IMG/VR virus record: IMGVR_UViG_3300043411_000942
Coordinates: 62,001 to 126,000 of that record
Length of the DNA stretch: 64,000 nucleotides
Direction: 5' to 3' (one strand)
Positions within the stretch are counted from its first letter, which is position 1. Every line of letters begins with the position of its first letter. The notes beneath the pieces were generated by a model, which did no database searches, was not told where the DNA came from, and worked only from the letters and a program-made list of their open reading frames with translations. The position numbers and the translations under genes are program-made. Positions 9,531 through 48,635 of this stretch are shown here, piece after piece.

Positions 9531-10088
9531 ATGCTCCCCCCTACCGTTTTATACTACTCACGCTTTCTGCGAGAACCCGGCCCGGTCTTTGACGCGCTCC
9601 GGGTTGCTTCGGCTTGGGAGCAGAAGAGCGTCACAATCTATGGGAAGTCGATTCCGCAGCCTCGCTTGATCGCGTGGTACGGGGACCCTGGTACCTCGTA
9701 CACCTACTCGGGGCTCAGAGTAGACCCCAACCCCTGGTTCCCTGCCCTGGCCTCTCTGAAGGCTGAGGTTGAGCGAGCTACGGGAGCCACCTTCAACTCG
9801 GTACTTCTTAACCTGTACCGTAACGGGTCGGATTCCGTAGCCTGGCATGCAGATGATGAGCCAGAACTTGGCTCGAATCCTACGATCGCCTCGGTAAGTC
9901 TTGGAGCTACACGTAAGTTTCAGCTCAAGCACAACCTTACCAAGGAGGTTTTCAGTGTAGACCTAACCTCAGGTAGTCTTCTCGTGATGTCTGGGAGCAC
10001 CCAGGAGACTTACAAACACGCGGTTTTGAAGACGACACGTCCTGTTGGAGAAAGGATCAACCTGACGTTTAGGCGAATTTTCAGTTAA
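9531..10088 (+). CDS. alkB: AlkB-family 2OG-Fe(II) dioxygenase (ALKBH2/3-like)
   Basis: QPRLIAWYG, NSVLLNLYRNG, WHADDE (HxD), YKHAV, RINLTFR. Confidence 0.93.
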   Translation: MLPPTVLYYSRFLREPGPVFDALRVASAWEQKSVTIYGKSIPQPRLIAWYGDPGTSYTYSGLRVDPNPWFPALASLKAEVERATGATFNSVLLNLYRNGSDSVAWHADDEPELGSNPTIASVSLGATRKFQLKHNLTKEVFSVDLTSGSLLVMSGSTQETYKHAVLKTTRPVGERINLTFRRIFS

Positions 10089-10352: not shown

Positions 10353-10425
10353 GGGACCTTAGCTCAGTTGGTAGAGCTGCGGACTTTTAATCCGTAGGTC
10401 GTGGGTTCAAGTCCCACAGGTCCCA
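10353..10425 (+). tRNA. trnK: tRNA-Lys(UUU), CCA not encoded
   Basis: GGGACCT/AGGTCCC acceptor; D arm GCTC-AGTTGGTA-GAGC; anticodon arm GCGGA-CTTTTAA-TCCGT; T arm GTGGG-TTCAAGT-CCCAC. Confidence 0.97.
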
Positions 10426-10580
10426 CTAACTGGATACTGTCTTAGCGAAGGTGTGCACCCTGAGCTATGATCGGACTCCAGCGAGGAGCTACCCGTTCCC
10501 ACGTAGATAGAGTGAGTCGCCCATCCCCCACTGGACTTGTTAAGCCCAACCGGATGGTCAACGACCCACTTAAACGGTAG

Positions 10581-10620
10581 AGAGGGGGGCTAGTATGCAG
10601 CTAGCCCCCTCTTGTTTTTT
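10581..10620 (+). terminator. intrinsic terminator
   Basis: AGAGGGGGGCTAG/CTAGCCCCCTCT stem followed by T tract. Confidence 0.75.
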
Positions 10621-10841
10621 CTCTTACGCCTGTGTGAGACTGGAGGTGCAAGTGTCTAACGTAAACGAGGTTACTGGTACTGACCATGACGGGCTGTGTG
10701 AGGAATGCGACACAACCTTGACGCACGAGAATCTCATTGAGAGCAGACTGGGTTTCTACTGTTCCGAGACATGCAAGGCTACGGCAGAGGACTACCCATA
10801 CGCCCCTTACCGCGAGGACTTCCACGCAGATTGAATGCAGC

Positions 10842-24280: not shown

Positions 24281-24510
24281 CACCGCTCTTCCCGTATTTC
24301 CGACTTGGCGGCTCTCCTGGCGGCCTTCCGTGGTTTCCGCCTCACCCGAGCCCGCTCCGATGCTGACGTGATGAACACACACCCGCCTCGGTCCGCGATG
24401 CGCTCGGGCTTGGACATGTCCGTGTTTGGTTTTGTACCGTAAGCCTTCATGCGGTTCGGCTTTGAGCGTTTACGCTTTACTGGCTCATGCTTTTTCTTGG
24501 TGTCACTCAC
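24280..24510 (-). CDS. small highly basic protein
   Basis: K/R-rich, coupled on both sides. Confidence 0.6.
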   Translation of the reverse strand: MSDTKKKHEPVKRKRSKPNRMKAYGTKPNTDMSKPERIADRGGCVFITSASERARVRRKPRKAARRAAKSEIREER

Positions 24511-25022
24511 GTCCTCACCTCAACCCCCATAGGAGAGTCTGCTAGGCTAGAATTCGTGTACCGAGCATCAAGAGTCACCTCTTCTCCGAGCCACCCTGGA
24601 AACGAGAACGCTTCATACTCACTAGTCAGCTCAATTTCAGCCATAACTAGTCCCGCGTTCGCTCCATGGAACTCGTCAATCTCCCAAATGTGACCCTCTG
24701 GTCGGTGGGGTTGGTGGTGGTAGCGGTACCGAGTCTTAGATACGATCGACCGGGTACAACGAGCTAACAACTCCTTTGCATCCCGTATTGGAATCTCGTA
24801 CTCGAACTCAGCACGCTTGAGCTTTCCTGCTCCCTTGATCGTAAGGTACCCAGTGCCGCCCCACTTACTCCCAACGGTTCGTATTCGCAGAAGGTGACGG
24901 TTATCTTCTAGAAGATAACCCTGCTCGTAGAGCTTTCCAGCCTCTGCAAATGCTCTCCAGGTGTCGTTCACAACGAGGAACTTGCGTTCAATCTCAATTC
25001 CCACGCCCACCTCCAATGTCAA
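24507..25022 (-). CDS. CYTH-domain triphosphatase (adenylate cyclase-like)
   Basis: EIERKFLV, QGYL, LRIR, LTIKG, KTRY, WEIDEF, AEIEL. Confidence 0.92.
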   Translation of the reverse strand: MTLEVGVGIEIERKFLVVNDTWRAFAEAGKLYEQGYLLEDNRHLLRIRTVGSKWGGTGYLTIKGAGKLKRAEFEYEIPIRDAKELLARCTRSIVSKTRYRYHHQPHRPEGHIWEIDEFHGANAGLVMAEIELTSEYEAFSFPGWLGEEVTLDARYTNSSLADSPMGVEVRT

Positions 25023-26286: not shown

Positions 26287-26481
26287 TCAGAGTTTGGCGA
26301 TTCCGTCTCGAATGGCCTTCTGAGTGGCGGCATTCCAGCGGTAGGACTTGGCGTCCATTTGAAGGTTCATGAACGCATCGCTCTTGCTCATCCCATCGAG
26401 GGAGCCGAGAAAATTCTGGACCGCGATGGTCTTGACGTCTTTGCGGGTAGAGAGCTTCTGGATGATTTCTGCGGTAAGCAT
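26287..26481 (-). CDS. small helical phage protein
   Basis: IAVQNFL..NLQMDAKSYRWN..T.KAIRDGI; promoter 26502-26530 and AAGGAG SD. Confidence 0.75.
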   Translation of the reverse strand: MLTAEIIQKLSTRKDVKTIAVQNFLGSLDGMSKSDAFMNLQMDAKSYRWNAATQKAIRDGIAKL

Positions 26482-26556
26482 TGTGTGTCTCCTTGCCTGA
26501 TACTACGAAGTGAGACCAGAAAGCTTTAACCGACTTCTACGATTTTCTTCTTCGGC

Positions 26557-26789
26557 TGGTAGGGTTGGTGGGAGTCGAACCCACTTGGTAGCTGCAAAGT
26601 CATGAGGGAAACGCGCTTCCTTCTATGGGCAGGTATCGGCCGTACCCCCAACTGTTACCAGGTGGGGCCATAGTCAGTGCATCCGCAACCTCACTTCAAT
26701 TCTGAAGCTCCTCTCCGAGCTTCCTACTCCAGCTATGGCTTTCGCCCCTCGATCCGTTTTTGAGTGCCTTTCCGTCAGGCTCCAACCCT
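26557..26789 (-). ncRNA. tRNA-like RNA (233 nt) with a ~150-nt structured insert in the variable-arm position
   Basis: Acceptor AGGGTTG/CAACCCT plus A-CCA; D arm GCCT-GACGGAA-AGGC; 17-nt degenerate anticodon arm; T arm GTGGG-TTCGACT-CCCAC; insert closed by TAGCTG/CAGCTA. Confidence 0.8.
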
Positions 26790-27686: not shown

Positions 27687-28166
27687 TTAAGTGTAGCTGG
27701 CAAAAAGACGATCGGCTGCCTCTTTTACCGAGAGGCCTTCCTCAAAGACAGTAAAGGGTTGCCCCACTGGGACTTTCTTCCGCTTGACTCTCTTATACTC
27801 TACCACGTCCACGCACATAAGTACCTGAGCAAGGTCGTTTGGAGGGTCTTGGGGGGCTCCAAAAATGAACCGGGCGTTTGGGACTGGAGCGAGCATCAAG
27901 CTGTGGTGAGACTCGAACATCTTCTTTATAGCCTGGAACCTAGGTTTCAGGTCTACTTGACTATCCACCTTGAACGTCGACTTTGAGGGCTGACGGTCTT
28001 GCTCAGCCTGTTCGGCTATGAGCTTCAGACAAGTCTTGCACTTCGGTACGAGGTGAGGGGCCACGTACTTAGGGTCAATGTTACGACCACACCACATGGC
28101 GTCCTCGGTTTCAAGTAACGCATGAGCAACGAGGTGCCCCGAGACGATACCTAGAATCCACTTCAT
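27687..28166 (-). CDS. Zn-binding N-domain hypothetical protein
   Basis: VAHAL..WCG..CKTC; ATGA coupling at 28166. Confidence 0.6.
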   Translation of the reverse strand: MKWILGIVSGHLVAHALLETEDAMWCGRNIDPKYVAPHLVPKCKTCLKLIAEQAEQDRQPSKSTFKVDSQVDLKPRFQAIKKMFESHHSLMLAPVPNARFIFGAPQDPPNDLAQVLMCVDVVEYKRVKRKKVPVGQPFTVFEEGLSVKEAADRLFASYT

Positions 28167-28570
28167 TGCGGCACCTTGAGTCCTTCTACGAGGTCTTTCG
28201 CCTCTTTGAGTCCACACCCTGTGAGCGATCGAACAAGGCGAATCTTTTCAAGCTTATTGTTAAAAGTCGCAGATTTTACCCAGAGGGTGAGCAGGTCACG
28301 AAGATCCGAAAGCTTCTCGGTCTCCATTCTCAATAGAACGTCAATGACCTCCTTAGGAGCCATACGTACATACACGCTCGTATCCGTGAAAGAGTTGTCG
28401 GCAAGTCCTTTACCGACCCGCCTCAGGTACTCTTTTCCACCGTCCACTGCGATGTTACCGCAAGTGCAAGTGAGGTAGTGGTGAACACTTACGCTCTCAA
28501 TTTCTGAGAGGCAAATGTGGCACTTGACCGAGTTGCGAGAAATTTTGATACTATCGTGGTCTGTGAGCAT
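28163..28570 (-). CDS. Zn-ribbon domain fused to ribosomal L7/L12 CTD
   Basis: N: NSVKCHICLSEIES..HHYLTCTCGNIAVDGG. C: KLEKIRLVRSLTGCGLKEAKDLVE. Confidence 0.82.
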   Translation of the reverse strand: MLTDHDSIKISRNSVKCHICLSEIESVSVHHYLTCTCGNIAVDGGKEYLRRVGKGLADNSFTDTSVYVRMAPKEVIDVLLRMETEKLSDLRDLLTLWVKSATFNNKLEKIRLVRSLTGCGLKEAKDLVEGLKVPQ

Positions 28571-31662: not shown

Positions 31663-31892
31663 CCTCCCAGCTTTAGGTGAGTCTTCGCCAGCAACTTTGC
31701 CTGGATTCGAGTCTTCCCGTCACGAGTACTAATCTGAATCCAAGCAGGTTTTCCTGGGATGGCCCAGAACCAGAGGTGAGATAGAAGATTCCACCAAGAC
31801 TTTGCATGCGTAAGCCAAACACCCCCCTTAGCGTCGATCACAATCATGCCATGAAGGGCGTAGGCTTTCGCTCGAATGATTTCGACTGTCAT
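31659..31892 (-). CDS. hypothetical protein
   Basis: ATGA coupling to the ligase. Confidence 0.5.
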   Translation of the reverse strand: MTVEIIRAKAYALHGMIVIDAKGGVWLTHAKSWWNLLSHLWFWAIPGKPAWIQISTRDGKTRIQAKLLAKTHLKLGG

Positions 31893-32593
31893 GACTCCTC
31901 AAGAAACGACCATCGGTCGGCTAACTTGTTCCTGGCAATTTCTTGGTGTGACCAGTGGTCGCTTGTAGATACGTGATCTTTTCGAACCCACTTGGCGACT
32001 GAGGTGGAGAACTCCGAGTCGCCAAAAGAGCCAGCAACCCGAACCACTACTCCCTCACGGACTCCCCCTAAAGCCGAGGGAGCTGTAGTAAACCTATCGG
32101 TAACCTCCTTGAGTTGATTCTCGGTTGTAACTGAGAACCTACCTAGTAGCGGAACCGTAGCTACTTCTAGTTGCTCTGCCCAGTCCTCAACCAACTCCCA
32201 AGGCTCCCAGCTACGGGTAACTCTAGTTGAGTGTAGCCCGTCGACCAAGTCTAAGTGCCGCACCCCAAAAAGTAGTAAGTAGCTTGGTAGTCTTGTGTAC
32301 TCAATGCTATGCTTTGCGTAGCACCACTCTCCAAAGATCTGGATCCCCTCAGGAATACCAGATTTCACTTGAGCGTGCAACGCCTTCAAAGCATCAAAGC
32401 TTGGGTGTTTTGGGGCCTTAGCATGGCTCCGTGCGTACACTGCGTCATGCTCAAGACAGACGTTAGACCCATCCACCTTCTCAGTGATAACGATCTCTCG
32501 GTTGAGTAGCCCATCAAGGGTTACGATCCTCTTGTCGTCGTTAGTCCCGCCAGGAGACCAGGTGAGATGAGGAGTTCTATTGTACTTGTCCAT
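31889..32593 (-). CDS. ATP-dependent RNA ligase (RNA_ligase family)
   Basis: KYNRTPHL, TEKVDGSN (motif I), FGEW, REGVVVR, KWVRKDH. Confidence 0.9.
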   Translation of the reverse strand: MDKYNRTPHLTWSPGGTNDDKRIVTLDGLLNREIVITEKVDGSNVCLEHDAVYARSHAKAPKHPSFDALKALHAQVKSGIPEGIQIFGEWCYAKHSIEYTRLPSYLLLFGVRHLDLVDGLHSTRVTRSWEPWELVEDWAEQLEVATVPLLGRFSVTTENQLKEVTDRFTTAPSALGGVREGVVVRVAGSFGDSEFSTSVAKWVRKDHVSTSDHWSHQEIARNKLADRWSFLEES

Positions 32594-32661
32594 AACACTG
32601 GCCTTTCTTACTAGTACCTACGAAAAGCCAGTGCTTGGACTTAACTACTTTCTACCGATCG

Positions 32662-33279
32662 TTACGGGTACAACGGAAATTGCGCCTTCACCTCAGGAGG
32701 CTCGCTGGGCTGAGTGGGCATAATGGCCTCGACCATCACGTCGCGCTCCGCCGTCAGGTCCTTTTCCGTAAGACGCCACCTACCAACCCCAAAGTTCTGC
32801 AAAACCCCCCTATTGCGTAGAGTGGTGATGAACCCTCGAACCTTAGGTAGGCGAAGGGGGTCAGAGGGTCCGTAAACGATAGATGCAATCTCGCCTACGC
32901 TTGCCCCCGGATTGTCTCTAAAGGCTGTGACAATCGACTTTACGATAGTACCCTTAGGTGTGTATGGCTTGTTGGCCTTCACCTTACGAGCCTTCTTGGT
33001 AGCCTTGGGGGTGGCCTTCTCTTGTGTACTTGGATTAGCGCCCTTCCTCTTGAATACAGCAAGAGCCTCAGCCATAATTGCTGGGACTTTGAGAGCCCCA
33101 CAACCAGCAATTATGGCAAGTACTTCAGCATCCTCTCGGGTCAGAAACGGATGGTAGCGACTCGTAATAGCATTCAGGTCTGCTACCACATGAGCAGGCA
33201 GATTTCTCTTCATTTGATCCTTCTTCATTTTGATCCTTTTTTTTTCCGCTAGGGGACTTGTGTAGGTTACACCAACCAC
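32662..33279 (-). CDS. C-terminal winged-HTH DNA-binding protein
   Basis: AFRDNPGASVGEIA..LRNRGVL..GRWRL; basic linker; start likely ~33228. Confidence 0.6.
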   Translation of the reverse strand: MVGVTYTSPLAEKKRIKMKKDQMKRNLPAHVVADLNAITSRYHPFLTREDAEVLAIIAGCGALKVPAIMAEALAVFKRKGANPSTQEKATPKATKKARKVKANKPYTPKGTIVKSIVTAFRDNPGASVGEIASIVYGPSDPLRLPKVRGFITTLRNRGVLQNFGVGRWRLTEKDLTAERDVMVEAIMPTQPSEPPEVKAQFPLYP

Positions 33280-33594
33280 CTAGCTAGCCCAGAACTTTTC
33301 AGCCATTTTCATGGCCCTTTGAATGTTTGCCAAACCCACCGGGTTTGCCGAGTGCACTCTCCACGTTATTGAGCGTAGGGTCCCAAAGTAAGCTCTCTTC
33401 TCGATAAACTGGGCTACCAGGTATCCTGTACCTGAAGTGCTTCCGAGGTCATGATCAAAGTCGATCTCGGTAACCTCACCTCTTGCCAAAATTCGACAAG
33501 CCTCCATAGCGGAAGAGACTCCCACCCAACCCTGAGGTGGGTGCCGGTCAGGGGTCGACGGGTCCTCAATTTGGTCATCAAGCCACAACTTCAT
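33280..33594 (-). CDS. cyclic-phosphate-processing receiver domain protein
   Basis: LWLDD, P.GW, DFDHDLG, GTGY, VHSANPVG. Confidence 0.85.
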   Translation of the reverse strand: MKLWLDDQIEDPSTPDRHPPQGWVGVSSAMEACRILARGEVTEIDFDHDLGSTSGTGYLVAQFIEKRAYFGTLRSITWRVHSANPVGLANIQRAMKMAEKFWAS

Positions 33595-33730
33595 GTTATC
33601 GACTCATTGGGTCATGAGGGGACGAGAAGTTCCCTACTCGGAGACCATTCTTCAGGGTGACAATGGGGATGCTCATACTCACGCCTACGGATTCTTGCAG
33701 GTTAGGCTTAAGGTAAAACTGACGTGCCGA

Positions 33731-34372
33731 TCACTTCAGCTTACGGTAACGGCTCATACGACTCAGTTTGATCGTCCGGTGGTCGGAGGTGTGGACCTCC
33801 CCATCCTTGAGGTTTACCGAACGTACCGTAAAGTAGTTGGCACGTCTACGATCTTTGGAGATCCAAACCTCCCCGAACTTCGGGATAAGGTTAGAGTCAG
33901 TCTCGTTGATTTCTATCGGAGACACTACCTCGTTGTCCTTAACGGTGGGGTACTCAAGGTCAAGAAGGTCATTGAATTCTTGGAATTCTTGGATGGGCTT
34001 CTGATCGAGCTTGCCACCTACGGTGCCCTCCTCCGCTGGTGCACCTGGGTCGACCGCTGTAGCCGCATCATCATAAACAAGAAACCCCTTGTCAGTGGCG
34101 GCCGTTGGGTCAGTAGCCGTACATACGTCCAAGTCATTACGGAGCCATGACGTGCACCTATTGACCCCAGCGAACTCTCTCACGTCCTCCTTAAGAGGGC
34201 CACCTACGAGCCGCTCTAAGCTGGCTCGTTTATTTACCGTGACGGCCTCATCTGATAAACGAGCGTTCCGCCACTCGGTAGGGTCTTCTCCAGCCAACCA
34301 AGCAGCGTAAGCTCCCGCTGCACAGGCCCACTCCATGAGAGTGAGCCCCTCAGAATTTTTCTTATTGCGCAT
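33731..34372 (-). CDS. multi-domain protein with C-terminal GEVWxSKDxRR domain
   Basis: GGTGTA-N9-ATG start; C-terminal domain shared with 22986-23738. Confidence 0.65.
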   Translation of the reverse strand: MRNKKNSEGLTLMEWACAAGAYAAWLAGEDPTEWRNARLSDEAVTVNKRASLERLVGGPLKEDVREFAGVNRCTSWLRNDLDVCTATDPTAATDKGFLVYDDAATAVDPGAPAEEGTVGGKLDQKPIQEFQEFNDLLDLEYPTVKDNEVVSPIEINETDSNLIPKFGEVWISKDRRRANYFTVRSVNLKDGEVHTSDHRTIKLSRMSRYRKLK

Positions 34373-34386
34373 ACCTAGTACTACAC

Positions 34387-35115
34387 CTACCAGCGACGCC
34401 GCTGCTGCTTTTTGGTTTTCACTACAGGACCTTTACCCTGAATCCAAGCATCAAGATCCGCCACGGTGCAGAGCATCGAGTTGTAAATGTCTTGCTGCAT
34501 AGGATTGAGCCAGAACTGAACAGTACCATCCGTCGCAAGTCTCGGGGACAAGGCAAAGTACTTCAACCCAGCGGCTTTGATGCGATCAGCAATCCCAGTC
34601 TCTTCTGCGGCCTTACGAAGAGCGTTTCGATCTTCGTCCGCCTTTTTCCAAGCTTGCTTGACTTCCGTAGGGAGGTTCGATGCCACTCCGATGCACAACC
34701 CTGCGTTATCGAAGACTCCCCCACCCCCAAGCCAAATGACAGCGTCGTTTGACTTGATTGCCTCGTAGATCACAAGGAGCTGCTTGATGATTTTGGGGTC
34801 TCCACTGAAAATCCCAAAGGAACCCTCATCCCATGCGCCCCAGGTAACCGTCCCCTTCATGGGTGTAGGGGGCTTTTGGTCCCTCCAAGTGGGGAGGAAT
34901 ATACCCTGAAACCCCTCGCCATTGAACCAGGTGAGTGCTGCTGGTACGGTATGCGTAAGCCGGGACGCTACACCGCACTCATCATCCTTGCAGTCAAAGT
35001 ATCGCCTCAGCAGTTTGATGCCCCACTCGTGCTCAGCACACAGGTCTGATCCAAGGTTTACTGCGACAACCTTGGATTTGCGAGCCACTACCTCTGCTTT
35101 TCGTCCGATTCTCAT
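34387..35115 (-). CDS. hypothetical phage protein
   Basis: ATG 35115 behind promoter 35123-35151; AEHEWGI, AWDEGSF, FALSP, FWLNP. Confidence 0.75.
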   Translation of the reverse strand: MRIGRKAEVVARKSKVVAVNLGSDLCAEHEWGIKLLRRYFDCKDDECGVASRLTHTVPAALTWFNGEGFQGIFLPTWRDQKPPTPMKGTVTWGAWDEGSFGIFSGDPKIIKQLLVIYEAIKSNDAVIWLGGGGVFDNAGLCIGVASNLPTEVKQAWKKADEDRNALRKAAEETGIADRIKAAGLKYFALSPRLATDGTVQFWLNPMQQDIYNSMLCTVADLDAWIQGKGPVVKTKKQQRRRW

Positions 35116-35150
35116 GTCTAGCCCTACGGAAGTAGAGAGAGTAAGCTTAA

Positions 35151-36311
35151 CTAAAATCTCGCCTGTTGGGCCAGGTCGATACACAGGCCGTCTATTCTGT
35201 GCAGGTCTGGCTTCTTAGGGAGCTTCGACACCTTAGCCAGCTCGGTTAGCTCCACGTCTTGCTTCGCTGCCCACTCGACAAGCTCGTAATAGTTCCAAGC
35301 CCCTGCTCGAATGCGTAGCAGGTCCTCAGCGTCCGGACGTCGCACAACAACCTTACCTTCAGTGAGGATTTCGCGGCACATTCGTAGGAGTCTCACTAGG
35401 TGCATGGCATGTTTCGTGTCGTACCCAAACTGCTCTTCTAGTTTCGCACGATCTGGATTGCGATTCTTCTTCCAATCTTGAAATTGCTGCCACTCTCGCA
35501 GTTTACTCGTGTAGCGTCGCTCCAAGTCGAGCAACTCAATGAAGTTCGTTGAAAACCCAAGGGAGTTCGCTGCTGCGTTCCAGGTCTTCTCTTCGACGTC
35601 TTTCCAGGACCACTTGGTGATCTCTAGCAGCCTACGGTAGAACTCGTCCTTAATGGATTGCCGGTTGGCTGGACCAAGCTCCTCTAGCTCGTGCCAATTC
35701 CACTCGTCCATGCGCTTATTGATTGTAGCGGAGGCAGCTGCAAGCTGATCTGCCGGGATAAGCGTGTGCTCAGGTAGATTAAACTCTGCTCGTGTTGGAG
35801 GCGCTACAGGAGGAGTCTTAATCCATCTGTAGTGAGTGTTGATTCTCTTGAGTTGTTGAGTCGCATACCCACTGAACGTGTGCTTTGCACGCTGAGAGAG
35901 GAACAGCTCGCGACTCCCCAGGAGGGTTGTCCCCAATGGGGACACGACCAGGTGGTCACTTTCGTCCGTGTAGAGGATCTCAAGAACGTTTGGATTACAC
36001 TCAGCCGCAAGTTTCATGAACTTGCGGAGTTCGAAGATCGTCAAGTCAGGCTCGGACTGAGTGACCTGCTCTACCGTGTTCAAAAACCCTAGGTAGTACT
36101 CACGCGGAGCGATCATGACTCCGCGTAGATCAAGATCGCTTGTAGGGAGGTTCGTCCCATAGGCGTGACTACCGTGACGAGTCAGGTAGATTGTCCGACT
36201 CGGTACCCACGATAAGTTACCTGAATACACGGGCTTCCAATCAAAGAGAAGCGTACTCTTGACTGGGATCAAGTCACTCCTTGGTGTATCCATGGAACCA
36301 CCCTTCTCCAC
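35151..36311 (-). CDS. Pol-beta-superfamily nucleotidyltransferase (Nuc-transf/YcgL-like)
   Basis: HGSHAYGTNLPTSDLDLRGV, NPNVLEIL, YDTKHAMHLVRLL. Confidence 0.9.
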   Translation of the reverse strand: MEKGGSMDTPRSDLIPVKSTLLFDWKPVYSGNLSWVPSRTIYLTRHGSHAYGTNLPTSDLDLRGVMIAPREYYLGFLNTVEQVTQSEPDLTIFELRKFMKLAAECNPNVLEILYTDESDHLVVSPLGTTLLGSRELFLSQRAKHTFSGYATQQLKRINTHYRWIKTPPVAPPTRAEFNLPEHTLIPADQLAAASATINKRMDEWNWHELEELGPANRQSIKDEFYRRLLEITKWSWKDVEEKTWNAAANSLGFSTNFIELLDLERRYTSKLREWQQFQDWKKNRNPDRAKLEEQFGYDTKHAMHLVRLLRMCREILTEGKVVVRRPDAEDLLRIRAGAWNYYELVEWAAKQDVELTELAKVSKLPKKPDLHRIDGLCIDLAQQARF

Positions 36312-36852
36312 GCGTGTCCGGACGCTGGCAGTGGGCCTGAGCCTCAGCTAGACTCAGGCCTCGCTTACCTCGCACAGCCTTGGGTGGGCCATTGAAGGTA
36401 AACTTGACGATCTTGTATGTATCGTTCGAGGTAGGCTTGCTGCTCATAAGCCCACCTACGGAAAGTAGAGCTGGGCTCTTAACTCCTTTCTCCACCTCAA
36501 GTTTTATGTACGCAATACATGCCGCCTGGAGCTTTGAGAGGTACTTTCCACATTCTAAGCCATGGAAATGTAAGTCTTTTTTGGGGGATCCTATGGCTGA
36601 CTCTAGAGTTACAGCCATCTGCATCGCTGCCTCCACAAGCTCTTGCGTAACGGCACGTTTACGGTTCGGAGTTAGTCGGAGGATACGAGCGGCTGGGAAA
36701 TCTTCCTGGGCGACTCGGCAAACATCTTGAGCTTCCTCAAGTTCGTGCGCTCCCCAACGTTTCGGCTTAACCTGCATCCCAAAGTAGGGGCCCCCAGGCT
36801 TCCCCGAGTAGGACAGAACGTAACCTAGTAGTTCTTGAGACTTGCGGCCCAT
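36274..36852 (-). CDS. read-through fusion ORF containing a nested small gene (36274-36447) with its own promoter
   Basis: class-1 promoter at 36455-36483 inside the ORF with in-frame ATG 36447; C-terminal YKIVKF..GLSLAEAQAHC..WFHGY. Confidence 0.65.
   Translation of the reverse strand: MGRKSQELLGYVLSYSGKPGGPYFGMQVKPKRWGAHELEEAQDVCRVAQEDFPAARILRLTPNRKRAVTQELVEAAMQMAVTLESAIGSPKKDLHFHGLECGKYLSKLQAACIAYIKLEVEKGVKSPALLSVGGLMSSKPTSNDTYKIVKFTFNGPPKAVRGKRGLSLAEAQAHCQRPDTRGEGWFHGYTKE
36455..36483 (-). promoter_or_regulatory. class-1 promoter nested inside an ORF
   Basis: GTTAAG-N17-CGTAGG-N7-ATG, in frame. Confidence 0.8.
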
Positions 36853-37259
36853 AGTTGATCCGTTAGCGTGGGAGCCCAAGGGGACTCTAGTAAAAATCTA
36901 AAGAGGTTGAGATTGTACTCTCGAAAAGAGCAAGCCTCCCCCAAGAGCCGTTTGGGATGAACCCAAGAGACAAACACCCCTGGCTCCAGTGTAGCAGGGT
37001 CCCCTTGCCACTGAGTAATCATGTAGGTCCAAACCAAGCATTTACTTACGGAGTCTACCCGAGTAAGTACATGCTCAGCCCTGAGGACCTTTACTCCAGT
37101 CTCCTCCTGGACCTCTCTCACTAGAGCGTCAAATGGCGTCTCGTCGATTTCTAGCTTACCTCCAGGTAACCCTAGATCGTACTGGTTACCTCTTCTGGAA
37201 ACAGCTAGAAGAGCCTCCTCGTGGAGGAGTAGCCCAACTACAGCGATAGGTTTTTGCAT
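36825..37259 (-). CDS. NUDIX hydrolase
   Basis: GLPGGKLEIDETPFDALVREVQEETGV Nudix box. Confidence 0.92.
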   Translation of the reverse strand: MQKPIAVVGLLLHEEALLAVSRRGNQYDLGLPGGKLEIDETPFDALVREVQEETGVKVLRAEHVLTRVDSVSKCLVWTYMITQWQGDPATLEPGVFVSWVHPKRLLGEACSFREYNLNLFRFLLESPWAPTLTDQLWAASLKNY

Positions 37260-39932: not shown

Positions 39933-40676
39933 ATGCGAATTCGAGTAGTGTCTGACCTGCATTGTGAGATGCACAGGGACCGAGGTTGGACCTTGGCCGT
40001 AGAGATTTGCCAAGACCTTGCATTTGACGTCCTAGTTCTTGCTGGGGACATTGCAACGGATGCGACACTAGATCCAGTACTCACAATGTTCTGCGAGCTG
40101 GTTGCACCTAAGCCCGTTCTATTCGTACTAGGAAACCACGAGTACTACGGCGGTTCCGTAGCTGGTACCGAGACAAAAGCTAGAGCGGTAGCGGAAGTGT
40201 TCCCCAACCTTCACGTCTTGGAGGGGGATATCGTAGAACTCCAGGGCCAAAGGTTCCTGGGGTGTACCCTTTGGTACGAGCACCCTAACTGGCTTCCCTC
40301 AGACGCAGACTTCGGGGACTTCAATCACATTGAAGGGTTTGCTGACTTTGTCCACCAGCAAGCAATGGACTCAGCAGACTTCCTTCGGTCCTCGATTCAA
40401 CCTGGTGACGTAGTAATCACACACTTTCTACCTCACCAGGATAGTATCGCACCTAAGTACAGGTTCTCGTCCTCGAATGGGTACTTCCTGCACAACGTGT
40501 CAGACATCGTAAGGTGTGGGGAGGCCAAGCTCTGGATCCACGGTCACACGCATAGCAGCGTAGATTACACGATTAACCAGACTAGGGTAATCTGCAACCC
40601 ATTCGGGTACGCTACAAAACCATACCCAGGAGAGCCAAATCCTGAGTTCAAGTCTCTACTTACAGTGAGGGTTTAG
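39933..40676 (+). CDS. calcineurin-like metallophosphoesterase
   Basis: SDLH, AGDI, GNHEYY, ITHFLP, WIHGHTH. Confidence 0.93.
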   Translation: MRIRVVSDLHCEMHRDRGWTLAVEICQDLAFDVLVLAGDIATDATLDPVLTMFCELVAPKPVLFVLGNHEYYGGSVAGTETKARAVAEVFPNLHVLEGDIVELQGQRFLGCTLWYEHPNWLPSDADFGDFNHIEGFADFVHQQAMDSADFLRSSIQPGDVVITHFLPHQDSIAPKYRFSSSNGYFLHNVSDIVRCGEAKLWIHGHTHSSVDYTINQTRVICNPFGYATKPYPGEPNPEFKSLLTVRV

Positions 40677-42647: not shown

Positions 42648-43880
42648 TCACGAGATGCCCAAGTATCGCATAGCTACTCGCGTCGTTAGGGGTTCGGAGA
42701 ACTTACTCCCAAGTTCCACCTCAACCTGAGCTTCAAGGGCTTGGGGGTTCAAGGTAGGGTTTGCGAGTAGTTGTTGGCGTGCCACCTGGAGTACTACGTT
42801 TCTCTCTTTCGGGGGAATCGAGTACTTGGCGAACAGCCTCTGTTGGTCAACAGGAGGCTTCTTGAGAGCCTCTACAAGAGCTACACCGTCTGAGGGGGGT
42901 AGCGCAAGAAGAAGCACCCTCAGTCGCTGCTGAGCAGCTCTATCGAGGAATGATAGAGGGGTTCGGATAACCCAACCAAGGTCAAGCAAGTCCAGCAACA
43001 GCTCAGCTTGCTTGTCATTCACATTCCTGCCAAGGGCCGCAGCAAAACCTGGCTCTGCCTCCAACATCTCCTTGATAGCGTCCGACAACCCCAACTGCAC
43101 TAGCAGCTCAACGCTCTTCCTTGGGGCAGGTCCCCCCAGGATATCCCCTACGAGGATTGAGCGCACAGCATCCCACGGCATTTTCTTGAGGCTTGGAGCA
43201 TTCTTTCGAATGCTGGCTACCATGTCCGGAGGAATCTTGAATCCGTACTTCGCTACGAACTTGATTGCACGTAGCATTCGGGTGGGGTCGTCTGAGAAGG
43301 TCTTGTCTGGATTCACCGGGGTCTTGAGCAACCTCTCTTCGAGGTGCTGCTTCCCTAGTCCCGTGAGGTCCAAAACCTCAGCTCGATCTGGACCGTGCTC
43401 AAGATCCAGTAAGCGCCACAACAGCGTGTTGAAGGTGAACTCACGCCGCTTGAGGTCCTCTTCGATGGTCGCAGGTTCCACCATGTGGGGCTTGTAGCCC
43501 TTACCACCCTCTCCGCCATAACTCTCCTTACGAGCGTTGGCAATCTCGATTACCTCGCCCTTTAGGTCATGACCGTCAAGGATCCAAGATTCCGAGATAG
43601 AGAGGATTGCGACCCCGTACTGATTGGTCGTCAGGTTGCATCGAGCGGGAATGAACTCCGAAACCTTCTTGGCAAACCAATCCGAGTCTCGGCCCTTCCC
43701 AGCAGCAACGCTGTCAAATACAACGTCGATGTCCTTGATGGGCTCCTTGAGGATCCAGTTTCGGACTGCCCCGCCTACAACGTAGACGTTCTCTGCAACA
43801 CCCAAGGATCGTGCCACCTTGGACAGGAACTTCATCAGGGCGACAGATCGATCGTGTAGGGAAGATGCGGTAATCATCAT
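42648..43880 (-). CDS. cca: class II tRNA nucleotidyltransferase (CCA-adding / poly(A) polymerase family)
   Basis: YVVGGAVRN, KDIDVV, EDLKRREFTFN, FSDDPTRMLRAIKF; no HD domain; C-terminal RVAMRY. Confidence 0.88.
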   Translation of the reverse strand: MMITASSLHDRSVALMKFLSKVARSLGVAENVYVVGGAVRNWILKEPIKDIDVVFDSVAAGKGRDSDWFAKKVSEFIPARCNLTTNQYGVAILSISESWILDGHDLKGEVIEIANARKESYGGEGGKGYKPHMVEPATIEEDLKRREFTFNTLLWRLLDLEHGPDRAEVLDLTGLGKQHLEERLLKTPVNPDKTFSDDPTRMLRAIKFVAKYGFKIPPDMVASIRKNAPSLKKMPWDAVRSILVGDILGGPAPRKSVELLVQLGLSDAIKEMLEAEPGFAAALGRNVNDKQAELLLDLLDLGWVIRTPLSFLDRAAQQRLRVLLLALPPSDGVALVEALKKPPVDQQRLFAKYSIPPKERNVVLQVARQQLLANPTLNPQALEAQVEVELGSKFSEPLTTRVAMRYLGIS

Positions 43881-44176: not shown

Positions 44177-44215
44177 ATGGTACACCCTACGAAAGGTAAC
44201 GGTGTAACTTAACCG

Positions 44216-44542
44216 ATGGCTCTAAGAATTCCACCAGTAACTCAACTAATTCGAGAGTTCCTAGCTGAAAACCCAGGCTCTACCGCCACTCAAGTTGCTA
44301 ACGGTATTGGACTAAAGTCCGCCAGCATCTCGTCTAAACTTACAGCTCAAGTTAACGAGGGGAAGCTGATCCGTGTAGCTGGAGAAGGGGTACGTGGAGG
44401 GTATGGGTACTATCTACCCCCCCCACGTATCCGCCTTCTAGTCCCCCGTACCCTACTAGGTGGGACAGACTTTTCAGCGCTGACTTTGAACAAAGTCCCA
44501 GTCACTCTGAGCATCCGCCATCGTCATCCCAACGATAGCTGA
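44216..44542 (+). CDS. winged-HTH protein (C8 tract, C-terminus uncertain)
   Basis: IREFLAENPGSTATQVA..ISSKL..GKLIR; GGTGTA-N9-ATG. Confidence 0.7.
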   Translation: MALRIPPVTQLIREFLAENPGSTATQVANGIGLKSASISSKLTAQVNEGKLIRVAGEGVRGGYGYYLPPPRIRLLVPRTLLGGTDFSALTLNKVPVTLSIRHRHPNDS

Positions 44543-46480: not shown

Positions 46481-46533
46481 CCTTAGTTTTCTCGTAGGTC
46501 TCCAAGTAAAGACGGATGAATTCTGGTGGTACT

Positions 46534-46551
46534 GGTGTAGCCATAGAGATG
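46534..46551 (+). promoter_or_regulatory. class-2 motif GGTGTA-N9-ATG
   Basis: same geometry at starts 14414(+), 20586(-), 34372(-), 38573(+), 44216(+); N10 at 45195(-); also 518-523 before the ncRNA. Confidence 0.6.
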
Positions 46552-47505
46552 CTCCATCCTAACCCTAAGATGCTGTTACGCATAGCCCAAGGTGACGCCT
46601 TTGGTATGGCGTGTGAATTTCGAACCGACAACCTGAAGGCAGCGTTGGAGTTCGATCGGTATATCCGTCATCCTGAGTGGGGTCCGGAAGCAGGTCATTA
46701 CACCGATGACACTCAGATGTCTATCGCAGTAGCCGAGAGCCTTATCCACCCACAAGGCCGTCGTCCTCCGAAATACGCACGCCCTGAAGACCTAACAAAA
46801 GAGGCTTTTGCTGAGGCCTTCGTCCAAGCATACAAGAGAGACCCACGACCTGGGTATGCGGTAAAGTTCCAGGCCTTCCTAGACTCAGTAAGCTCTGGTG
46901 CCGAATTCCTCTTGAAGATAAACCCGGAGTCAGATAAGAACGGTGCCGCAATGCGCTCCGTTCCGCTTGGCGTTATCTTACACGAACCCAATCTACTAGA
47001 GGTAGCTGCAACGCAAGCGAGCCTGACTCACAACACAGAGGGAGGTATTACCTCTTCTCAGATGGTAGCCCTTGCATCTAGGTTCGCCTTGTACGAGAGT
47101 GCTCCACTCACGGAGATTTTCGATTACATTGGAGACTGGCTACACCTGAGCAACCTACGGTGGGAGGGCGGTCCTGTAGTAGGACCTAACCTGGGGATGC
47201 TCACTGCAAGGGCAGCTATTACCCTAGTAATTGGTGAACCTAACTTACTGAGTATTGCAAAGAAGGCTCTTATCTGGGGTGGAGACACTGACTCTGTGCT
47301 AGCTATCGCCTGGGGTATTGCTAGTGCTCGAAAGGACGGAGCGGAGCTTCCCGACTTCTTCCATAGAGACCTAGAGAACGGACCTTACGGTCGAGACTAC
47401 CTAGCAGGGTTAGGTAGAGCCTTGATGGGTTACTTTGCTCCACCTGGGTTTGCTGCTGAGTTTGTTGTAAGCAAGAACGCGGTCTTGCCCCTCAAGAAGG
47501 ACTGA
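46549..47505 (+). CDS. ADP-ribosylglycohydrolase (ARH/DraG family)
   Basis: GDAFG, YTDDTQMS, NGAAMRSVP, GGDTDS; GGTGTA-N9-ATG. Confidence 0.92.
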   Translation: MLHPNPKMLLRIAQGDAFGMACEFRTDNLKAALEFDRYIRHPEWGPEAGHYTDDTQMSIAVAESLIHPQGRRPPKYARPEDLTKEAFAEAFVQAYKRDPRPGYAVKFQAFLDSVSSGAEFLLKINPESDKNGAAMRSVPLGVILHEPNLLEVAATQASLTHNTEGGITSSQMVALASRFALYESAPLTEIFDYIGDWLHLSNLRWEGGPVVGPNLGMLTARAAITLVIGEPNLLSIAKKALIWGGDTDSVLAIAWGIASARKDGAELPDFFHRDLENGPYGRDYLAGLGRALMGYFAPPGFAAEFVVSKNAVLPLKKD

Positions 47506-47506: not shown

Positions 47507-48112
47507 ATGAGTATACTTACCGGTAGCAAGATCAAGAGTGAAGTTGAGGCTGGTAACATCCGTATTACCCCATACTCAGAGGACCAACTCAACCCAGCTA
47601 GCTATGACCTTACCCTTGGGGATGAGCTTAGGGTCTACAAGGATTGGGTAGGGTACAATGAGCACGCTAGCCCCCCAAGGGCTGGTCAGGACATGTTCCC
47701 TTGCGCCAAGGTGTGTGATGTCAAGCAAGAGCTTGAAACGGTAAGTTTCCAGATCCCACCTACGGGATGGGTACTAAGACCAGGTATCGGCTACCTCTTA
47801 CACACAGTAGAGCAAGTGTGGACACGGAATTACGTGCCAATTGTAGATGGGAAGTCTTCGATTGGTAGGCTATTTGTCCTCATCCACTTCACGGCTGGAT
47901 TCGGGGACCCAAACTTTGACGGCCAGTACACTCTAGAGGTGTCTGCTCTCCACCCAGTACGAATCTACCCAGGTATGCGTATAGGTCAGATTCGATTCCA
48001 TACGGTTGAGGGGGAGTTGGACCGACCGTATGAAGGTAACTACAAGGAGGGTACCGCGAGGGGAGCTGTAGCCTCAAGGTCGTGGAATCAATTCCCTAAG
48101 AAAGATGACTAA
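47507..48112 (+). CDS. dcd: dCTP deaminase
   Basis: QLNPASYDLTLG, GKSSIGR, AGFGDPNFDGQYTLE, PGMRIGQI. Confidence 0.93.
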   Translation: MSILTGSKIKSEVEAGNIRITPYSEDQLNPASYDLTLGDELRVYKDWVGYNEHASPPRAGQDMFPCAKVCDVKQELETVSFQIPPTGWVLRPGIGYLLHTVEQVWTRNYVPIVDGKSSIGRLFVLIHFTAGFGDPNFDGQYTLEVSALHPVRIYPGMRIGQIRFHTVEGELDRPYEGNYKEGTARGAVASRSWNQFPKKDD

Positions 48113-48635
48113 CATGCTCATGCCCAAGCGCTTGCCTATCCGATACTACCCAGATGCCATCCTCCACCAGAAGTGTGCACCCGTAACCGAGGTTACGGAG
48201 AGCGTGAAGCAGCTAGCTTCCGACATGCTTCTTACGATGATGCAGTGTCGAGGGCTGGGGTTGGCTGCACCTCAAGTTGGGGTGCCTATTCGACTTTTCG
48301 TTGTTGACGTAGAGTGGCCAGATGGCGTAGAGAACTCCACCTCCTACATATTCATCAACCCTACTTTGAGGTTGCTTGAACCCACTGTAAAGTCTGTCGA
48401 GGGCTGCATCTCGTTCCCAGGAGAACGATTTGAGCTGACTCGTGCAAGTCGCATCGAGGTTGACGCGCTAGACCTCGATGGTAAGCCCTTCACTCTCGAA
48501 GCAGAAGGGCTCCTTGCTGTAGCTATCCAACACGAGTACGACCACCTAGAGGGAAAGACTGGAGCGGAAAGTCTTTCCTGGCTAAAGCGGAACCTACTAC
48601 GTAAGAAGGTCGAGAAGCTTACGAAGCGTGGCTAA
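48105..48635 (+). CDS. def: peptide deformylase
   Basis: GLGLAAPQVG, EGCIS, QHEYDHLEG. Confidence 0.96.
   Translation: MTNMLMPKRLPIRYYPDAILHQKCAPVTEVTESVKQLASDMLLTMMQCRGLGLAAPQVGVPIRLFVVDVEWPDGVENSTSYIFINPTLRLLEPTVKSVEGCISFPGERFELTRASRIEVDALDLDGKPFTLEAEGLLAVAIQHEYDHLEGKTGAESLSWLKRNLLRKKVEKLTKRG

What the first reader, a model, noticed from the sequence alone, without database searches (positions are those of the whole stretch)
26557..26789. tRNA-shaped RNA with encoded CCA, a broken anticodon arm and a ~150-nt structured insert
Seen on the - strand: a perfect 7-bp acceptor (A1:U72, G3:C70, A73, CCA encoded), a canonically placed D arm with GG, and a canonical T arm (GTGGG-TTCGACT-CCCAC). A 17-nt anticodon-length arm (CTCAA-AAACGGA-TCGAG) lacks U33 and has a mismatch. 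The variable-arm position holds GGC-GAAA-GCC plus a multi-hairpin domain closed by TAGCTG/CAGCTA (GAAGCTC/GAGCTTC, CCCCA..GTAA..TGGGG, GGTA/TACC, GGAAGC/GTTTCC). GCCATAG/CTATGGC offers an alternative pairing. It is not a tmRNA (no G3-U70, no Ala-rich tag) and I see no group I P7 pairing. Inference: a new tRNA-mimic ncRNA that could be processed and perhaps aminoacylated, acting as a decoy for anticodon nucleases or uncharged-tRNA sensors, or as a ribosome-binding RNA carrying a cargo domain.
Basis: partly seen in the sequence, partly recalled or inferred. Interest (0 to 1): 0.88.

Follow-up and report, generated by a model that had tools for sequence, protein, structure and literature searches.

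The report
Phage tRNA-shaped RNA with large insert
An uncultured jumbo phage encodes a conserved 233-base RNA with the outer shape of a tRNA and a roughly 150-base folded domain where the variable loop should be; in related phages it sits directly in front of a tRNA-repair ligase gene, so it is probably a non-decoding RNA used in the phage-host conflict over tRNA damage, though its function is untested.

Summary
Window 26557-26789 (- strand) has a perfect 7-bp acceptor stem, a D arm with GG, a canonical T arm, a defective anticodon-like hairpin, and a ~150-nt multi-helix domain in the variable-loop position.

It is a real RNA gene:
- Four sequence variants exist in one narrow clade of wastewater jumbo phages. 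They are 95-98% identical, while flanking genes are 86-90% identical.
- Homology stops exactly at the acceptor ends.
- Substitutions include four compensatory pairs in three helices. Only one of 72 predicted pairs is broken, in one variant.
- ORFs across the region are not conserved.

No Rfam family, ARAGORN call or phage GenBank record matches it. It is not a tRNA, tmRNA, group I intron or Y RNA.

The alternative pairing GCCAUAG/CUAUGGC is broken in all relatives. The encoded CCA is specific to the window lineage: relatives read CUA, and here it lies at the scar of a deleted RLIG1 gene.

In the other three variants the RNA ends 9-12 nt before an RLIG1 (PF17720) tRNA-ligase gene. The window also carries a large RNA-repair gene set.

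Best reading: a tRNA-scaffolded, non-decoding stable RNA matured by tRNA enzymes, whose cargo domain acts in the tRNA damage/repair conflict. The function is inferred, not shown.

The parts
26557..26789 (-). Whole tRNA-shaped RNA (233 nt as encoded; nt 1 = 26789)
   Evidence: Four variants (window type, L014, L101-L110, L274) are 95-98% identical. Homology to L014 begins at nt 1-2 and ends at nt 231. Flanks are 86-90% identical or unrelated.
26783..26789 (-). Acceptor stem, 5' strand (nt 1-7)
   Evidence: Pairs with nt 223-229. Pair 1-229 occurs as A-U, G.U and G-C. Pair 7-223 occurs as G-C, A-U and one A.C intermediate.
26557..26567 (-). Acceptor stem 3' strand (nt 223-229), discriminator A230, and CCA (231-233)
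   Evidence: C232 is U in all relatives, so CCA is specific to the window lineage.
26766..26780 (-). D arm GCCU-GACGGAA-AGGC (nt 10-24), with GG in the loop
   Evidence: Invariant in all four variants, so it is conserved but has no covariation.
26748..26764 (-). Anticodon-arm-like hairpin CUCAA-AAACGGA-UCGAG (nt 26-42), with A at position 33 and an A.C mismatch
   Evidence: RNAalifold keeps only 3 bp. Invariant in all variants.
26737..26746 (-). GNRA hairpin GGC-GAAA-GCC (nt 44-53)
   Evidence: Invariant.
26589..26735 (-). Inserted structured domain (nt 55-201). It contains closing helix 55-60/196-201, hairpin 67-73/80-86, long-range helix 96-101/183-188, helix 117-122/162-167 and a GUAA-capped hairpin 123-144.
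   Evidence: A69-U84 becomes G-C (L014). A99-U185 becomes G-C (L274). A56G gives G.U. The extra G in relatives pairs with C202. C128A turns a C.U mismatch into A-U. No Rfam match.
26568..26584 (-). T arm GUGGG-UUCGACU-CCCAC (nt 206-222)
   Evidence: local match to the T arm of the tmRNA model. Invariant.
26526..26557 (-). Remnant of the 3' end of a deleted RLIG1 gene, abutting the RNA
   Evidence: Window 26557-26233 aligns with L101 4536-4862, and the L101 RLIG1 ORF is 4001-4567. Relative to L101 the window therefore lacks about 543 nt, covering the short spacer and most of RLIG1.
26287..26481 (-). Downstream 64-aa gene (no family hit), used as the anchor to find relatives
31889..36311 (-). 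Same-strand RNA-repair genes upstream: RNA ligase PF09414 (31889-32593), cREC_REC (33280-33594) and RlaP nucleotidyltransferase (35151-36311)
42648..43880 (-). CCA-adding-enzyme-like protein (PolyA_pol head and RNA-binding domains)
   Evidence: It could supply the CCA that is not encoded in the relatives' copies of the RNA (inference).

Best explanation
This is a phage gene for a stable, non-decoding RNA built on a tRNA chassis.

Shown:
- It is a discrete RNA gene on the - strand.
- Its acceptor stem and at least two helices of the inserted domain are maintained by selection.
- It is not protein-coding.
- It belongs to no described RNA family.
- It is physically linked to RNA-repair genes.

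Inferred:
1. It is transcribed within the long - strand gene block.
2. The acceptor/T-arm/D-arm frame makes it a substrate for tRNA maturation: RNase P at the 5' end, then 3' trimming to the discriminator and CCA addition. In most variants the CCA must be added, and the phage carries its own CCA-adding enzyme gene. This gives defined, protected ends.
3. The ~150-nt domain grafted into the variable-loop position, with two GNRA loops and several helices, is the working part. It probably binds a protein.
4. Because the ancestral arrangement is RNA followed by RLIG1 (a ligase that seals broken tRNA anticodon loops) inside a repair island, the RNA most likely acts in the conflict over tRNA cleavage. 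It could be a decoy or sponge for a host tRNA-targeting nuclease or sensor, or a partner of the repair enzymes.
5. It does not decode. It has A33, a mismatched 3-5 bp anticodon-like stem, G8/G14 and a ~160-nt variable region.
For: Conservation:
- RNA identity is 95-98% among four variants, against 86-90% in flanking genes.
- The binomial probability of so few changes is about 3e-6.
- Against L014, homology starts and stops at the acceptor ends.

Structure:
- 72 predicted pairs, 99.7% of cells paired.
- Compensatory changes occur at pairs 7-223, 69-84 and 99-185, and pair 1-229 runs through A-U, G.U and G-C.
- In a simulation with three variants, P(no broken pair) = 6e-4 and P(at least 3 compensatory pairs) = 2.5e-5.
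- G.U pairs fix the strand as -.

Not coding:
- The ORF called over the RNA in L014 is frameshifted in the window and stopped in L101.
- The two substitutions inside the internal 23-codon ORF are both nonsynonymous (read from the alignments).

tRNA frame:
- The covariance model built from the RNA aligns end to end with genuine tRNAs (window tRNA-Lys, 22.7 bits).
- By chance such a frame appears in 2% of randomised 64-kb sequences.

Context:
- RLIG1 lies 9-12 nt downstream in L014, L101-L110 and L274.
- RLIG1 homologues ligate tRNA anticodon loops in vitro (PMC11494293), and their genes are enriched next to tRNA genes (PMC10364804; confirmed).
- The window encodes RlaP, cREC, RNA ligase, NUDIX, a CCA-adding enzyme, CYTH and AlkB.
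- The window lineage lost RLIG1 but kept the RNA, identical in contigs from at least three independent assemblies (L001, L002, L020). This argues that the RNA works without RLIG1 in cis.
Against: - There are no expression data, so maturation, stability and any binding partner are all inferred.
- Only four close variants exist. Most helices, and the D arm, anticodon-like arm and T arm, never vary, so they are conserved but unproven as pairs.
- The structure was derived from the same sequences used to test it.
- MFE is not better than shuffles (z = -1.48).
- The column-shuffle control is only modestly exceeded (11-16 of 500 shuffles reach the observed values).
- The RNA was found in no other RLIG1 neighbourhood among about 200 loci. 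The link to RLIG1 therefore rests on one phage clade.
- A decoy would be expected to copy a real anticodon loop. This one lacks U33.
Confidence: 0.5

Rival explanations
1. Cis-acting element of the RLIG1 transcript. The tRNA-shaped RNA is a 5' processing/stability module or an autoregulatory tRNA mimic that binds the ligase and controls its translation. It would not be a trans-acting RNA.
For: - In three variants the RNA ends 9-12 nt before the RLIG1 start codon, and the Shine-Dalgarno-like AGG lies in the RNA's 3' trailer.
- Elsewhere, ordinary tRNA genes end 13-96 nt upstream of RLIG1 on the same strand (L203, L240, L159, L172/L174). A tRNA followed by RLIG1 as a co-transcript seems to be a general layout.
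Against: - The window lineage deleted RLIG1 but keeps the RNA intact, with a structure-improving A1-U229 pair.
- A simple processing signal would not need a conserved 150-nt domain with compensatory changes.
Confidence: 0.15
2. Intron-containing pre-tRNA. The ~147-nt domain is excised, either by self-splicing or by a nuclease followed by ligation (RLIG1 or the PF09414 ligase), leaving a class-II-like tRNA with an ACG (Arg-like) anticodon.
For: - Removing nt 55-201 in silico leaves 86 nt with a short GGC-GAAA-GCC variable arm.
- A20, C35, G36 and A73 match the E. coli ArgRS identity set (established knowledge, not tested here).
- An RNA ligase gene is adjacent.
Against: - No group I or other ribozyme model matches, even at E up to 10.
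- The insert lies in the variable region rather than the anticodon loop, and at 147 nt it is below known group I sizes.
- The only P1-like pairing is broken in relatives.
- No insert-free allele was found.
- The joined product still lacks U8, A14, U33 and a sound anticodon stem, and ARAGORN does not call it.
Confidence: 0.06
3. tmRNA-like or otherwise aminoacylated RNA that enters the ribosome.
For: - It has a tRNA-like domain with a large internal domain.
- The T arm matches the tmRNA model locally.
- The phage encodes translation-related proteins: peptide deformylase and a protein with an L7/L12 C-terminal domain.
Against: - G3-C227 replaces G3.U70.
- ARAGORN finds no tmRNA.
- Rfam gives 15.1 bits against a gathering score of 47, for the T arm only.
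- The only internal ORF lacks a tag-like end and takes nonsynonymous changes.
- No SmpB was found among about 60 ORFs scanned.
Confidence: 0.03
4. Decaying pseudo-tRNA or chance resemblance with no function.
For: - It deviates from tRNA rules.
- Its distribution is narrow.
- MFE is unremarkable.
Against: - It is conserved above its flanks.
- It shows compensatory changes.
- Its homology boundaries are exact.
- It is identical across independent metagenomes.
Confidence: 0.03

Closest known systems
Phage T4 species 1 RNA (rnaC) and species 2 RNA (rnaD), small stable RNAs of the T4 tRNA cluster
   Same: - These are phage-encoded stable RNAs that are not tRNAs.
- rnaC (139 nt) ends in a T arm (CCGGG-UUCGAAU-CCCGG) followed by a strand that pairs with the 5' end, around an enlarged structured interior.
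- Their function is still unknown (PMC9697503).
   Different: - No sequence similarity.
- T4 rnaC has an imperfect terminal helix and no D arm or anticodon-like arm in tRNA positions.
- It lies inside a tRNA gene array. The present RNA is 16 kb from the only tRNA in the window and is tied to RLIG1 instead.
- The interior here is larger.
tmRNA (RF00023)
   Same: - Acceptor stem, T arm and a D-loop analogue frame a large internal domain.
- It is matured like a tRNA.
   Different: - No G3.U70.
- No conserved tag reading frame.
- A true D stem and an anticodon-like hairpin are present.
- It is about 130 nt shorter.
- No model match beyond the T arm.
Bacterial Y RNA / YrlA with Ro (Rsr), a tRNA-mimicking RNA in RNA-repair operons
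   Same: - A tRNA-like module in a non-decoding RNA that is genetically linked to RNA repair genes (PMC4201824; PMC7824862 notes this for some jumbo phages).
   Different: - In YrlA the RNA ends form the Ro-binding stem and the acceptor-like stem is closed. Here the ends are the acceptor stem itself.
- No Rfam hit.
- No TROVE/Ro protein was found among the window ORFs scanned.
Ordinary tRNA genes placed directly upstream of RLIG1/DUF5565 genes and in RLIG1-containing tRNA arrays
   Same: - Same gene order (a tRNA-shaped gene followed by RLIG1), same strand, and a spacing of about 10-100 nt (PMC10364804).
   Different: - Those are canonical tRNAs called by ARAGORN.
- This one has a ~150-nt insert and a defective anticodon arm.
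Engineered tRNA scaffolds for recombinant RNA (own knowledge: Ponchon and Dardel 2007), and natural tRNA-like processing handles such as mascRNA
   Same: - A tRNA frame is used to obtain processing and stability for a passenger RNA.
   Different: - In engineered scaffolds the passenger replaces the anticodon stem-loop. Here it sits in the variable region and the anticodon-like arm is kept.

Membership tests
tRNA (RF00005 / ARAGORN) | 7-bp acceptor stem, D arm with G18 G19, and T arm with a UUCRA loop | tested here: met
   Read from the sequence. The T arm matches. The acceptor stem is supported by covariation.
tRNA (RF00005 / ARAGORN) | 5-bp anticodon stem, 7-nt loop with U33, and U8/A14 core | tested here: not met
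   A33, an A.C mismatch in the stem, G8 and G14. RNAalifold keeps only 3 bp.
tRNA (RF00005 / ARAGORN) | Variable region of 4-21 nt and a model score above threshold | tested here: not met
   The variable region is about 163 nt. ARAGORN makes no call. There is no Rfam tRNA hit even at E up to 10. ARAGORN still makes no call after in-silico removal of the insert.
tmRNA (RF00023 and relatives) | G3.U70 alanine identity pair | tested here: not met
   G3 pairs with C227 in all four variants.
tmRNA (RF00023 and relatives) | Internal tag reading frame under coding constraint | tested here: not met
   The only internal ORF (nt 119-190) ends in ...AFPS. Its two substitutions are both nonsynonymous: C128A (Pro to Thr) and C182U (Pro to Ser).
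tmRNA (RF00023 and relatives) | Model match or ARAGORN tmRNA call | tested here: not met
   15.1 bits against a gathering score of 47, for the T arm only. ARAGORN finds none.
Group I intron in a tRNA gene (RF00028) | Conserved catalytic core (P3-P8, P7 G-binding site) detectable by the model | tested here: not met
   No hit at E up to 10 on 801 nt or on the 156-nt insert alone.
Group I intron in a tRNA gene (RF00028) | P1 pairing of the 5' exon end with an internal guide, and insertion in the anticodon loop | tested here: not met
   The candidate pairing GCCAUAG/CUAUGGC is broken by the inserted G and by A56G in relatives. The insert lies in the variable region.
Y RNA / YrlA | RNA termini form the Ro-binding stem, the acceptor-like stem is closed, and a Ro/TROVE gene lies nearby | tested here: not met
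   The termini are the acceptor stem. No Rfam hit. No TROVE domain among about 60 window ORFs scanned.
Phage tRNA-shaped stable RNAs (T4 rnaC type; a kind, not a curated family) | Phage-encoded, non-decoding, with a terminal helix and adjacent T arm framing an enlarged interior | tested here: met
   for T4 rnaC. for this RNA.
Phage tRNA-shaped stable RNAs (T4 rnaC type; a kind, not a curated family) | Accumulates as a processed stable RNA in infected cells | not testable with these tools
   The phage is uncultured and no expression data are available here.

The most novel reading that the evidence does not exclude
The RNA is an RNA-based anti-defence factor. In this reading it is a tRNA mimic, matured and CCA-tailed like a tRNA, whose grafted domain traps or inhibits a host tRNA-targeting immune nuclease or a sensor of damaged or uncharged tRNA. 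It would work alongside, but independently of, the phage's RLIG1/RlaP/cREC repair enzymes. That would make it the first non-decoding tRNA decoy with a dedicated effector domain described in a phage.
Probability: 0.2. Interest if true: 0.8.

Novelty: new variant of a known kind. Interest (0 to 1): 0.6.

Why it matters
Phage-encoded tRNA-shaped RNAs that are not tRNAs have been known since T4 species 1 and 2 RNAs, and their function is still unexplained.

This RNA is a clean, strongly conserved example with three useful properties:
- A complete tRNA frame.
- A large separate domain.
- A genetic link to a defined enzyme, the RLIG1 tRNA ligase, inside a rich RNA-repair island.

That gives concrete hypotheses to test: binding to RLIG1, RlaP or the CCA-adding enzyme, and cleavage by or inhibition of anticodon nucleases. 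The natural RLIG1-deletion variant already separates the RNA from the ligase.

The RNA also shows that tRNA finders and Rfam miss this class. Further unannotated tRNA-shaped RNAs turned up next to RLIG1 in gut-phage contigs. If the cargo domain proves to be a protein-binding module presented on a tRNA handle, it would be a natural counterpart of engineered tRNA scaffolds.

Tried and rejected
Searches for known families and homologues:
- ARAGORN and Rfam (gathering and permissive) on the window, the region and the insert alone found nothing beyond the T arm.
- blastn of the region against 50,697 phage records found no match.
- Exact and degenerate DNA patterns in IMG/VR recovered only the two near-identical jumbo-phage contigs. 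All 43 other hits of the loop-only pattern were chance, with no stems.

Searches through neighbouring genes:
- More distant homologues of the downstream 64-aa gene (60-73% identity: L005, L008-L013) do not have the RNA next to them.
- nhmmer and the covariance model R1 over about 200 RLIG1 neighbourhoods from viral, metagenome and genome collections found no homologue, only ordinary tRNAs.

Tests of specific ideas:
- In-silico removal of the insert followed by ARAGORN recognised no forward-strand tRNA.
- Comparing the tRNA-like core with 180 tRNAs from the fetched loci gave no clear isotype of origin. The 'Arg-like' reading rests only on A20/C35/G36/A73 and is not claimed.
- No recurring promoter motif or consensus promoter/terminator was found upstream.
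- The hairpin GCCGG-GAAAGA-CCGGC just upstream is absent in L014, so it is not part of the RNA.
- Protein-coding readings are rejected, as set out in the full report.

Full report
**What is there.**
- A perfect 7-bp acceptor stem (nt 1-7 with 223-229), then A230 and CCA.
- A D arm GCCU-GACGGAA-AGGC in the canonical place, with GG in the loop.
- A 17-nt hairpin CUCAA-AAACGGA-UCGAG where the anticodon arm belongs.
- A GNRA hairpin GGC-GAAA-GCC.
- A 6-bp helix UAGCUG/CAGCUA closing a ~135-nt multi-helix interior.
- A 4-nt linker and a canonical T arm GUGGG-UUCGACU-CCCAC.

Departures from tRNA rules are G8 and G14 (not U8/A14), A33 (not U33), an A.C mismatch in the anticodon-like stem, and a variable region of about 163 nt.

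ARAGORN finds only one tRNA in the window, Lys-UUU at 10353-10426. Rfam at gathering thresholds agrees. In permissive mode only the T arm matches, locally, the tmRNA model at 15.1 bits against a gathering score of 47. The insert alone matches nothing.

A T arm followed by a perfectly complementary 7-bp acceptor frame arises in 2% of randomised 64-kb sequences. The MFE is not exceptional (z = -1.48).

**Where it comes from.** The window is part of an uncultured jumbo phage.
- The exact T-arm/acceptor 28-mer occurs in two IMG/VR contigs of 233 and 380 kb whose sequence is identical over the RNA.
- No GenBank phage record is similar.

**Relatives.** The downstream 64-aa protein was used as an anchor. 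Contig look-ups then recovered three further variants of the RNA. The fourth came through the DUF7695/L12 protein.
- L014.
- L101-L110.
- L274.
- An identical copy in an NCBI metagenome assembly, L020.

Pairwise identity of the RNA is 95-98%. Flanking coding DNA between the same phages is 86-90% identical. The probability of so few changes at the flanking rate is about 3e-6. Against L014, similarity begins at nt 1-2 and ends at nt 231, and the upstream sequence is unrelated. The RNA is therefore a discrete conserved unit whose limits are the acceptor-stem ends.

**Is it a structured RNA?** RNAalifold predicts 72 pairs in 12 helices. Across the four variants 99.7% of pair cells are standard pairs. 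The changes are as follows.

| Change (window nt) | Variant(s) | Effect |
|---|---|---|
| Pair 1-229 | all | A-U (window), G.U (L014, L274), G-C (L101) |
| G7-C223 | L101; L274 | A-U in L101; A.C intermediate in L274 |
| A69-U84 | L014 | G-C |
| A99-U185 | L274 | G-C, in a long-range helix inside the insert |
| A56G, A81G | relatives | G.U pairs |
| Extra G after A54 | all relatives | pairs with C202, lengthening the closing helix to 7 bp |
| C128A | L014, L274 | converts a C.U mismatch into A-U |
| Remaining changes | - | fall in loops or junctions |

In a simulation that placed the same numbers of substitutions at random (three variants), no pair was broken in 0.06% of trials and three or more compensatory pairs appeared in 0.0025%. 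The tool's own column-shuffle control is weaker with so few sequences (11-16 of 500 shuffles reach the observed values). Sliding the partners by 1-3 columns drops pairing to 43-50%. The G.U pairs would be A.C on the other strand, so the - strand is the functional one.

Limits of this evidence:
- The D arm, anticodon-like hairpin, GAAA hairpin, T arm and several inner helices never vary. They are conserved but untested as pairs.
- The structure was derived from the same sequences used to test it.

**Not coding.**
- A 64-codon ORF was called over the RNA in L014. In the window it is frameshifted because the inserted G is absent, and in L101 it is stopped by UAG created by G7A (read).
- The internal 23-codon ORF (nt 119-190) has no Shine-Dalgarno sequence. 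Its two substitutions are both first-position nonsynonymous changes.

1. The alternative pairing GCCAUAG/CUAUGGC is broken in every relative, by the inserted G and in two variants also by A56G.
2. The encoded CCA is not a conserved feature, since relatives read A-CUA. In the window the sequence right after the RNA matches the last ~32 nt of the RLIG1 ORF of L101. The window lineage has therefore deleted about 543 nt carrying RLIG1, and the CCA lies at that scar, with C232 specific to this lineage. In the relatives CCA would have to be added after transcription. The phage encodes a CCA-adding-type enzyme at 42648-43880.

**Context.** In L014, L101-L110 and L274 the RNA ends 9-12 nt before the start codon of a 186-190-aa PF17720 (RLIG1/DUF5565) protein.
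- RLIG1 is a 5'-phosphate/3'-hydroxyl RNA ligase that binds tRNA and seals breaks in the anticodon loop in vitro. Bacterial and viral homologues are active (PMC11494293).
- tRNA genes are statistically enriched near DUF5565 genes (PMC10364804).
- I confirmed this layout. Among about 200 RLIG1 loci fetched from viral, metagenome and genome collections, canonical tRNAs end 13-96 nt upstream of RLIG1 in several (L203, L240, L159, L172/L174). RLIG1 also sits inside large tRNA arrays in Phormidium, Albitalea and Coleofasciculus contigs and in many gut-phage contigs.
- None of these loci contains a homologue of the present RNA, by nhmmer or, for the closest viral loci, by covariance model.

The window itself carries a dense RNA-repair set:

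| Gene | Window coordinates |
|---|---|
| RlaP nucleotidyltransferase | 35151-36311 |
| cREC phosphoesterase domain | 33280-33594 |
| PF09414 RNA ligase | 31889-32593 |
| NUDIX | 36825-37259 |
| CCA-adding enzyme | 42648-43880 |
| Calcineurin-like phosphoesterase | 39933-40676 |
| CYTH | 24507-25022 |
| AlkB-like oxygenase, next to tRNA-Lys(UUU) | 9531-10088 |

The set matches the jumbo-phage counter-measures against tRNA-cleaving host effectors described in PMC7824862. RlaP has since been shown to add nucleotides to damaged tRNA ends (bioRxiv 10.64898/2025.12.29.696909).

**Interpretation.**

Shown:
- A discrete, selected, structured, non-coding RNA with a tRNA outer frame and a large inserted domain.
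- It is genetically linked to tRNA-repair genes.
- It is absent from known RNA families.

Inferred:
- Maturation by RNase P and CCA addition, giving a stable RNA.
- No role in decoding.
- The insert is the functional module.
- It acts in the tRNA damage/repair conflict, as a decoy or sponge or as a repair cofactor.

The window lineage lost RLIG1 but kept the RNA unchanged in contigs from several independent assemblies. This argues that the RNA is more than a leader of the RLIG1 mRNA, although that rival stays open.

A spliced pre-tRNA is unlikely. There is no ribozyme core, the insertion position is wrong, no insert-free allele was found, and the joined product is still defective. A tmRNA-like role is unlikely too: there is no G3.U70, no constrained tag frame and no SmpB.

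A20, C35, G36 and A73 coincide with the E. coli arginine identity set (established knowledge). I could not test charging, and a comparison with 180 tRNAs gave no isotype of origin.

**Comparison with what is known.** The closest known things are the T4 small stable RNAs, species 1 (rnaC) and species 2 (rnaD). rnaC also ends in a T arm and terminal helix around an enlarged interior, and its function is still unknown (PMC9697503). The present RNA differs from T4 rnaC in four ways:
- It has a complete tRNA frame, including a D arm and an anticodon-like arm.
- It carries a much larger insert, placed in the variable region.
- It is linked to RLIG1.
- It has no sequence similarity to T4 rnaC.

It fails the defining tests for tRNA, tmRNA, group I intron and Y RNA (see the membership table).

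**Verdict.** This is a new RNA family of narrow distribution within a known but poorly understood kind: phage tRNA-shaped, non-decoding RNAs. It is interesting mainly because its gene context makes the function testable.

Noticed in passing
window 24507-25022, 31889-37259, 39933-40676, 42648-43880, 9531-10088: A dense RNA-repair and tRNA-maintenance gene set: CYTH, PF09414 RNA ligase, cREC_REC, RlaP, NUDIX, calcineurin-like phosphoesterase, CCA-adding-type nucleotidyltransferase, and an AlkB-like 2OG-Fe(II) oxygenase immediately upstream of tRNA-Lys(UUU).
   Followed up: partly
window 26526-26557: A deletion scar. The last ~32 nt of an RLIG1 ORF survive directly after the RNA. Relatives L014, L101-L110 and L274 carry the intact 186-190-aa RLIG1 gene there.
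   Followed up: yes
window 28163-28570 (-): A 135-aa protein combining DUF7695 with a ribosomal L7/L12 C-terminal-like domain, which in L7/L12 contacts translational GTPases. It is conserved 1.4 kb upstream of the RNA in all variants of the clade.
   Followed up: no
L052 357-476 (also L069, L082); L063 489-625 (also L081, L089); L036 436-542; L083 342-459: Other unannotated tRNA-shaped RNAs with a 7-bp terminal helix, an adjacent T arm and an abnormal 60-90-nt interior. They lie in phage contigs that carry RLIG1, inside or beside tRNA arrays. The L036 copy starts 26 nt after RLIG1. They are not called by ARAGORN and have no Rfam hit. The 121-nt and 138-nt families show compensatory changes.
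   Followed up: partly
L238 (Phormidium sp.), L239 (Albitalea terrae), L272 (Coleofasciculus), L203: RLIG1/DUF5565 genes embedded in arrays of 16-25 tRNA genes in bacterial and metagenomic contigs. In L203, L240, L159 and L172/L174 a canonical tRNA ends 13-96 nt upstream of RLIG1.
   Followed up: partly
L010 about 4340-4432: A degenerate ~90-nt tRNA-like element (UGAGAUU ... UUGGG-UUCGACU-CCCAA AAUCUCA, no CCA) in a 454-kb contig related through the 64-aa protein. ARAGORN does not call it.
   Followed up: no
window 44186-44473 (-): A 288-nt intergenic gap that folds better than shuffles (z = -2.9) and contains a long G-rich/C-rich hairpin. It has no Rfam match at gathering thresholds.
   Followed up: no
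window 10427-10736 (+): A 310-nt non-coding stretch after tRNA-Lys that contains a strong terminator-like hairpin followed by a U run, at about 10575-10625.
   Followed up: no
window 46516-47505, 47507-48112, 48105-48635, 48632-49312, 61973-62749, 3428-4132: Auxiliary genes typical of jumbo phages: ADP-ribosylglycohydrolase, dCTP deaminase-like, peptide deformylase, AdoMet decarboxylase-like, Ku, and a GmrSD N-terminal-domain protein.
   Followed up: no
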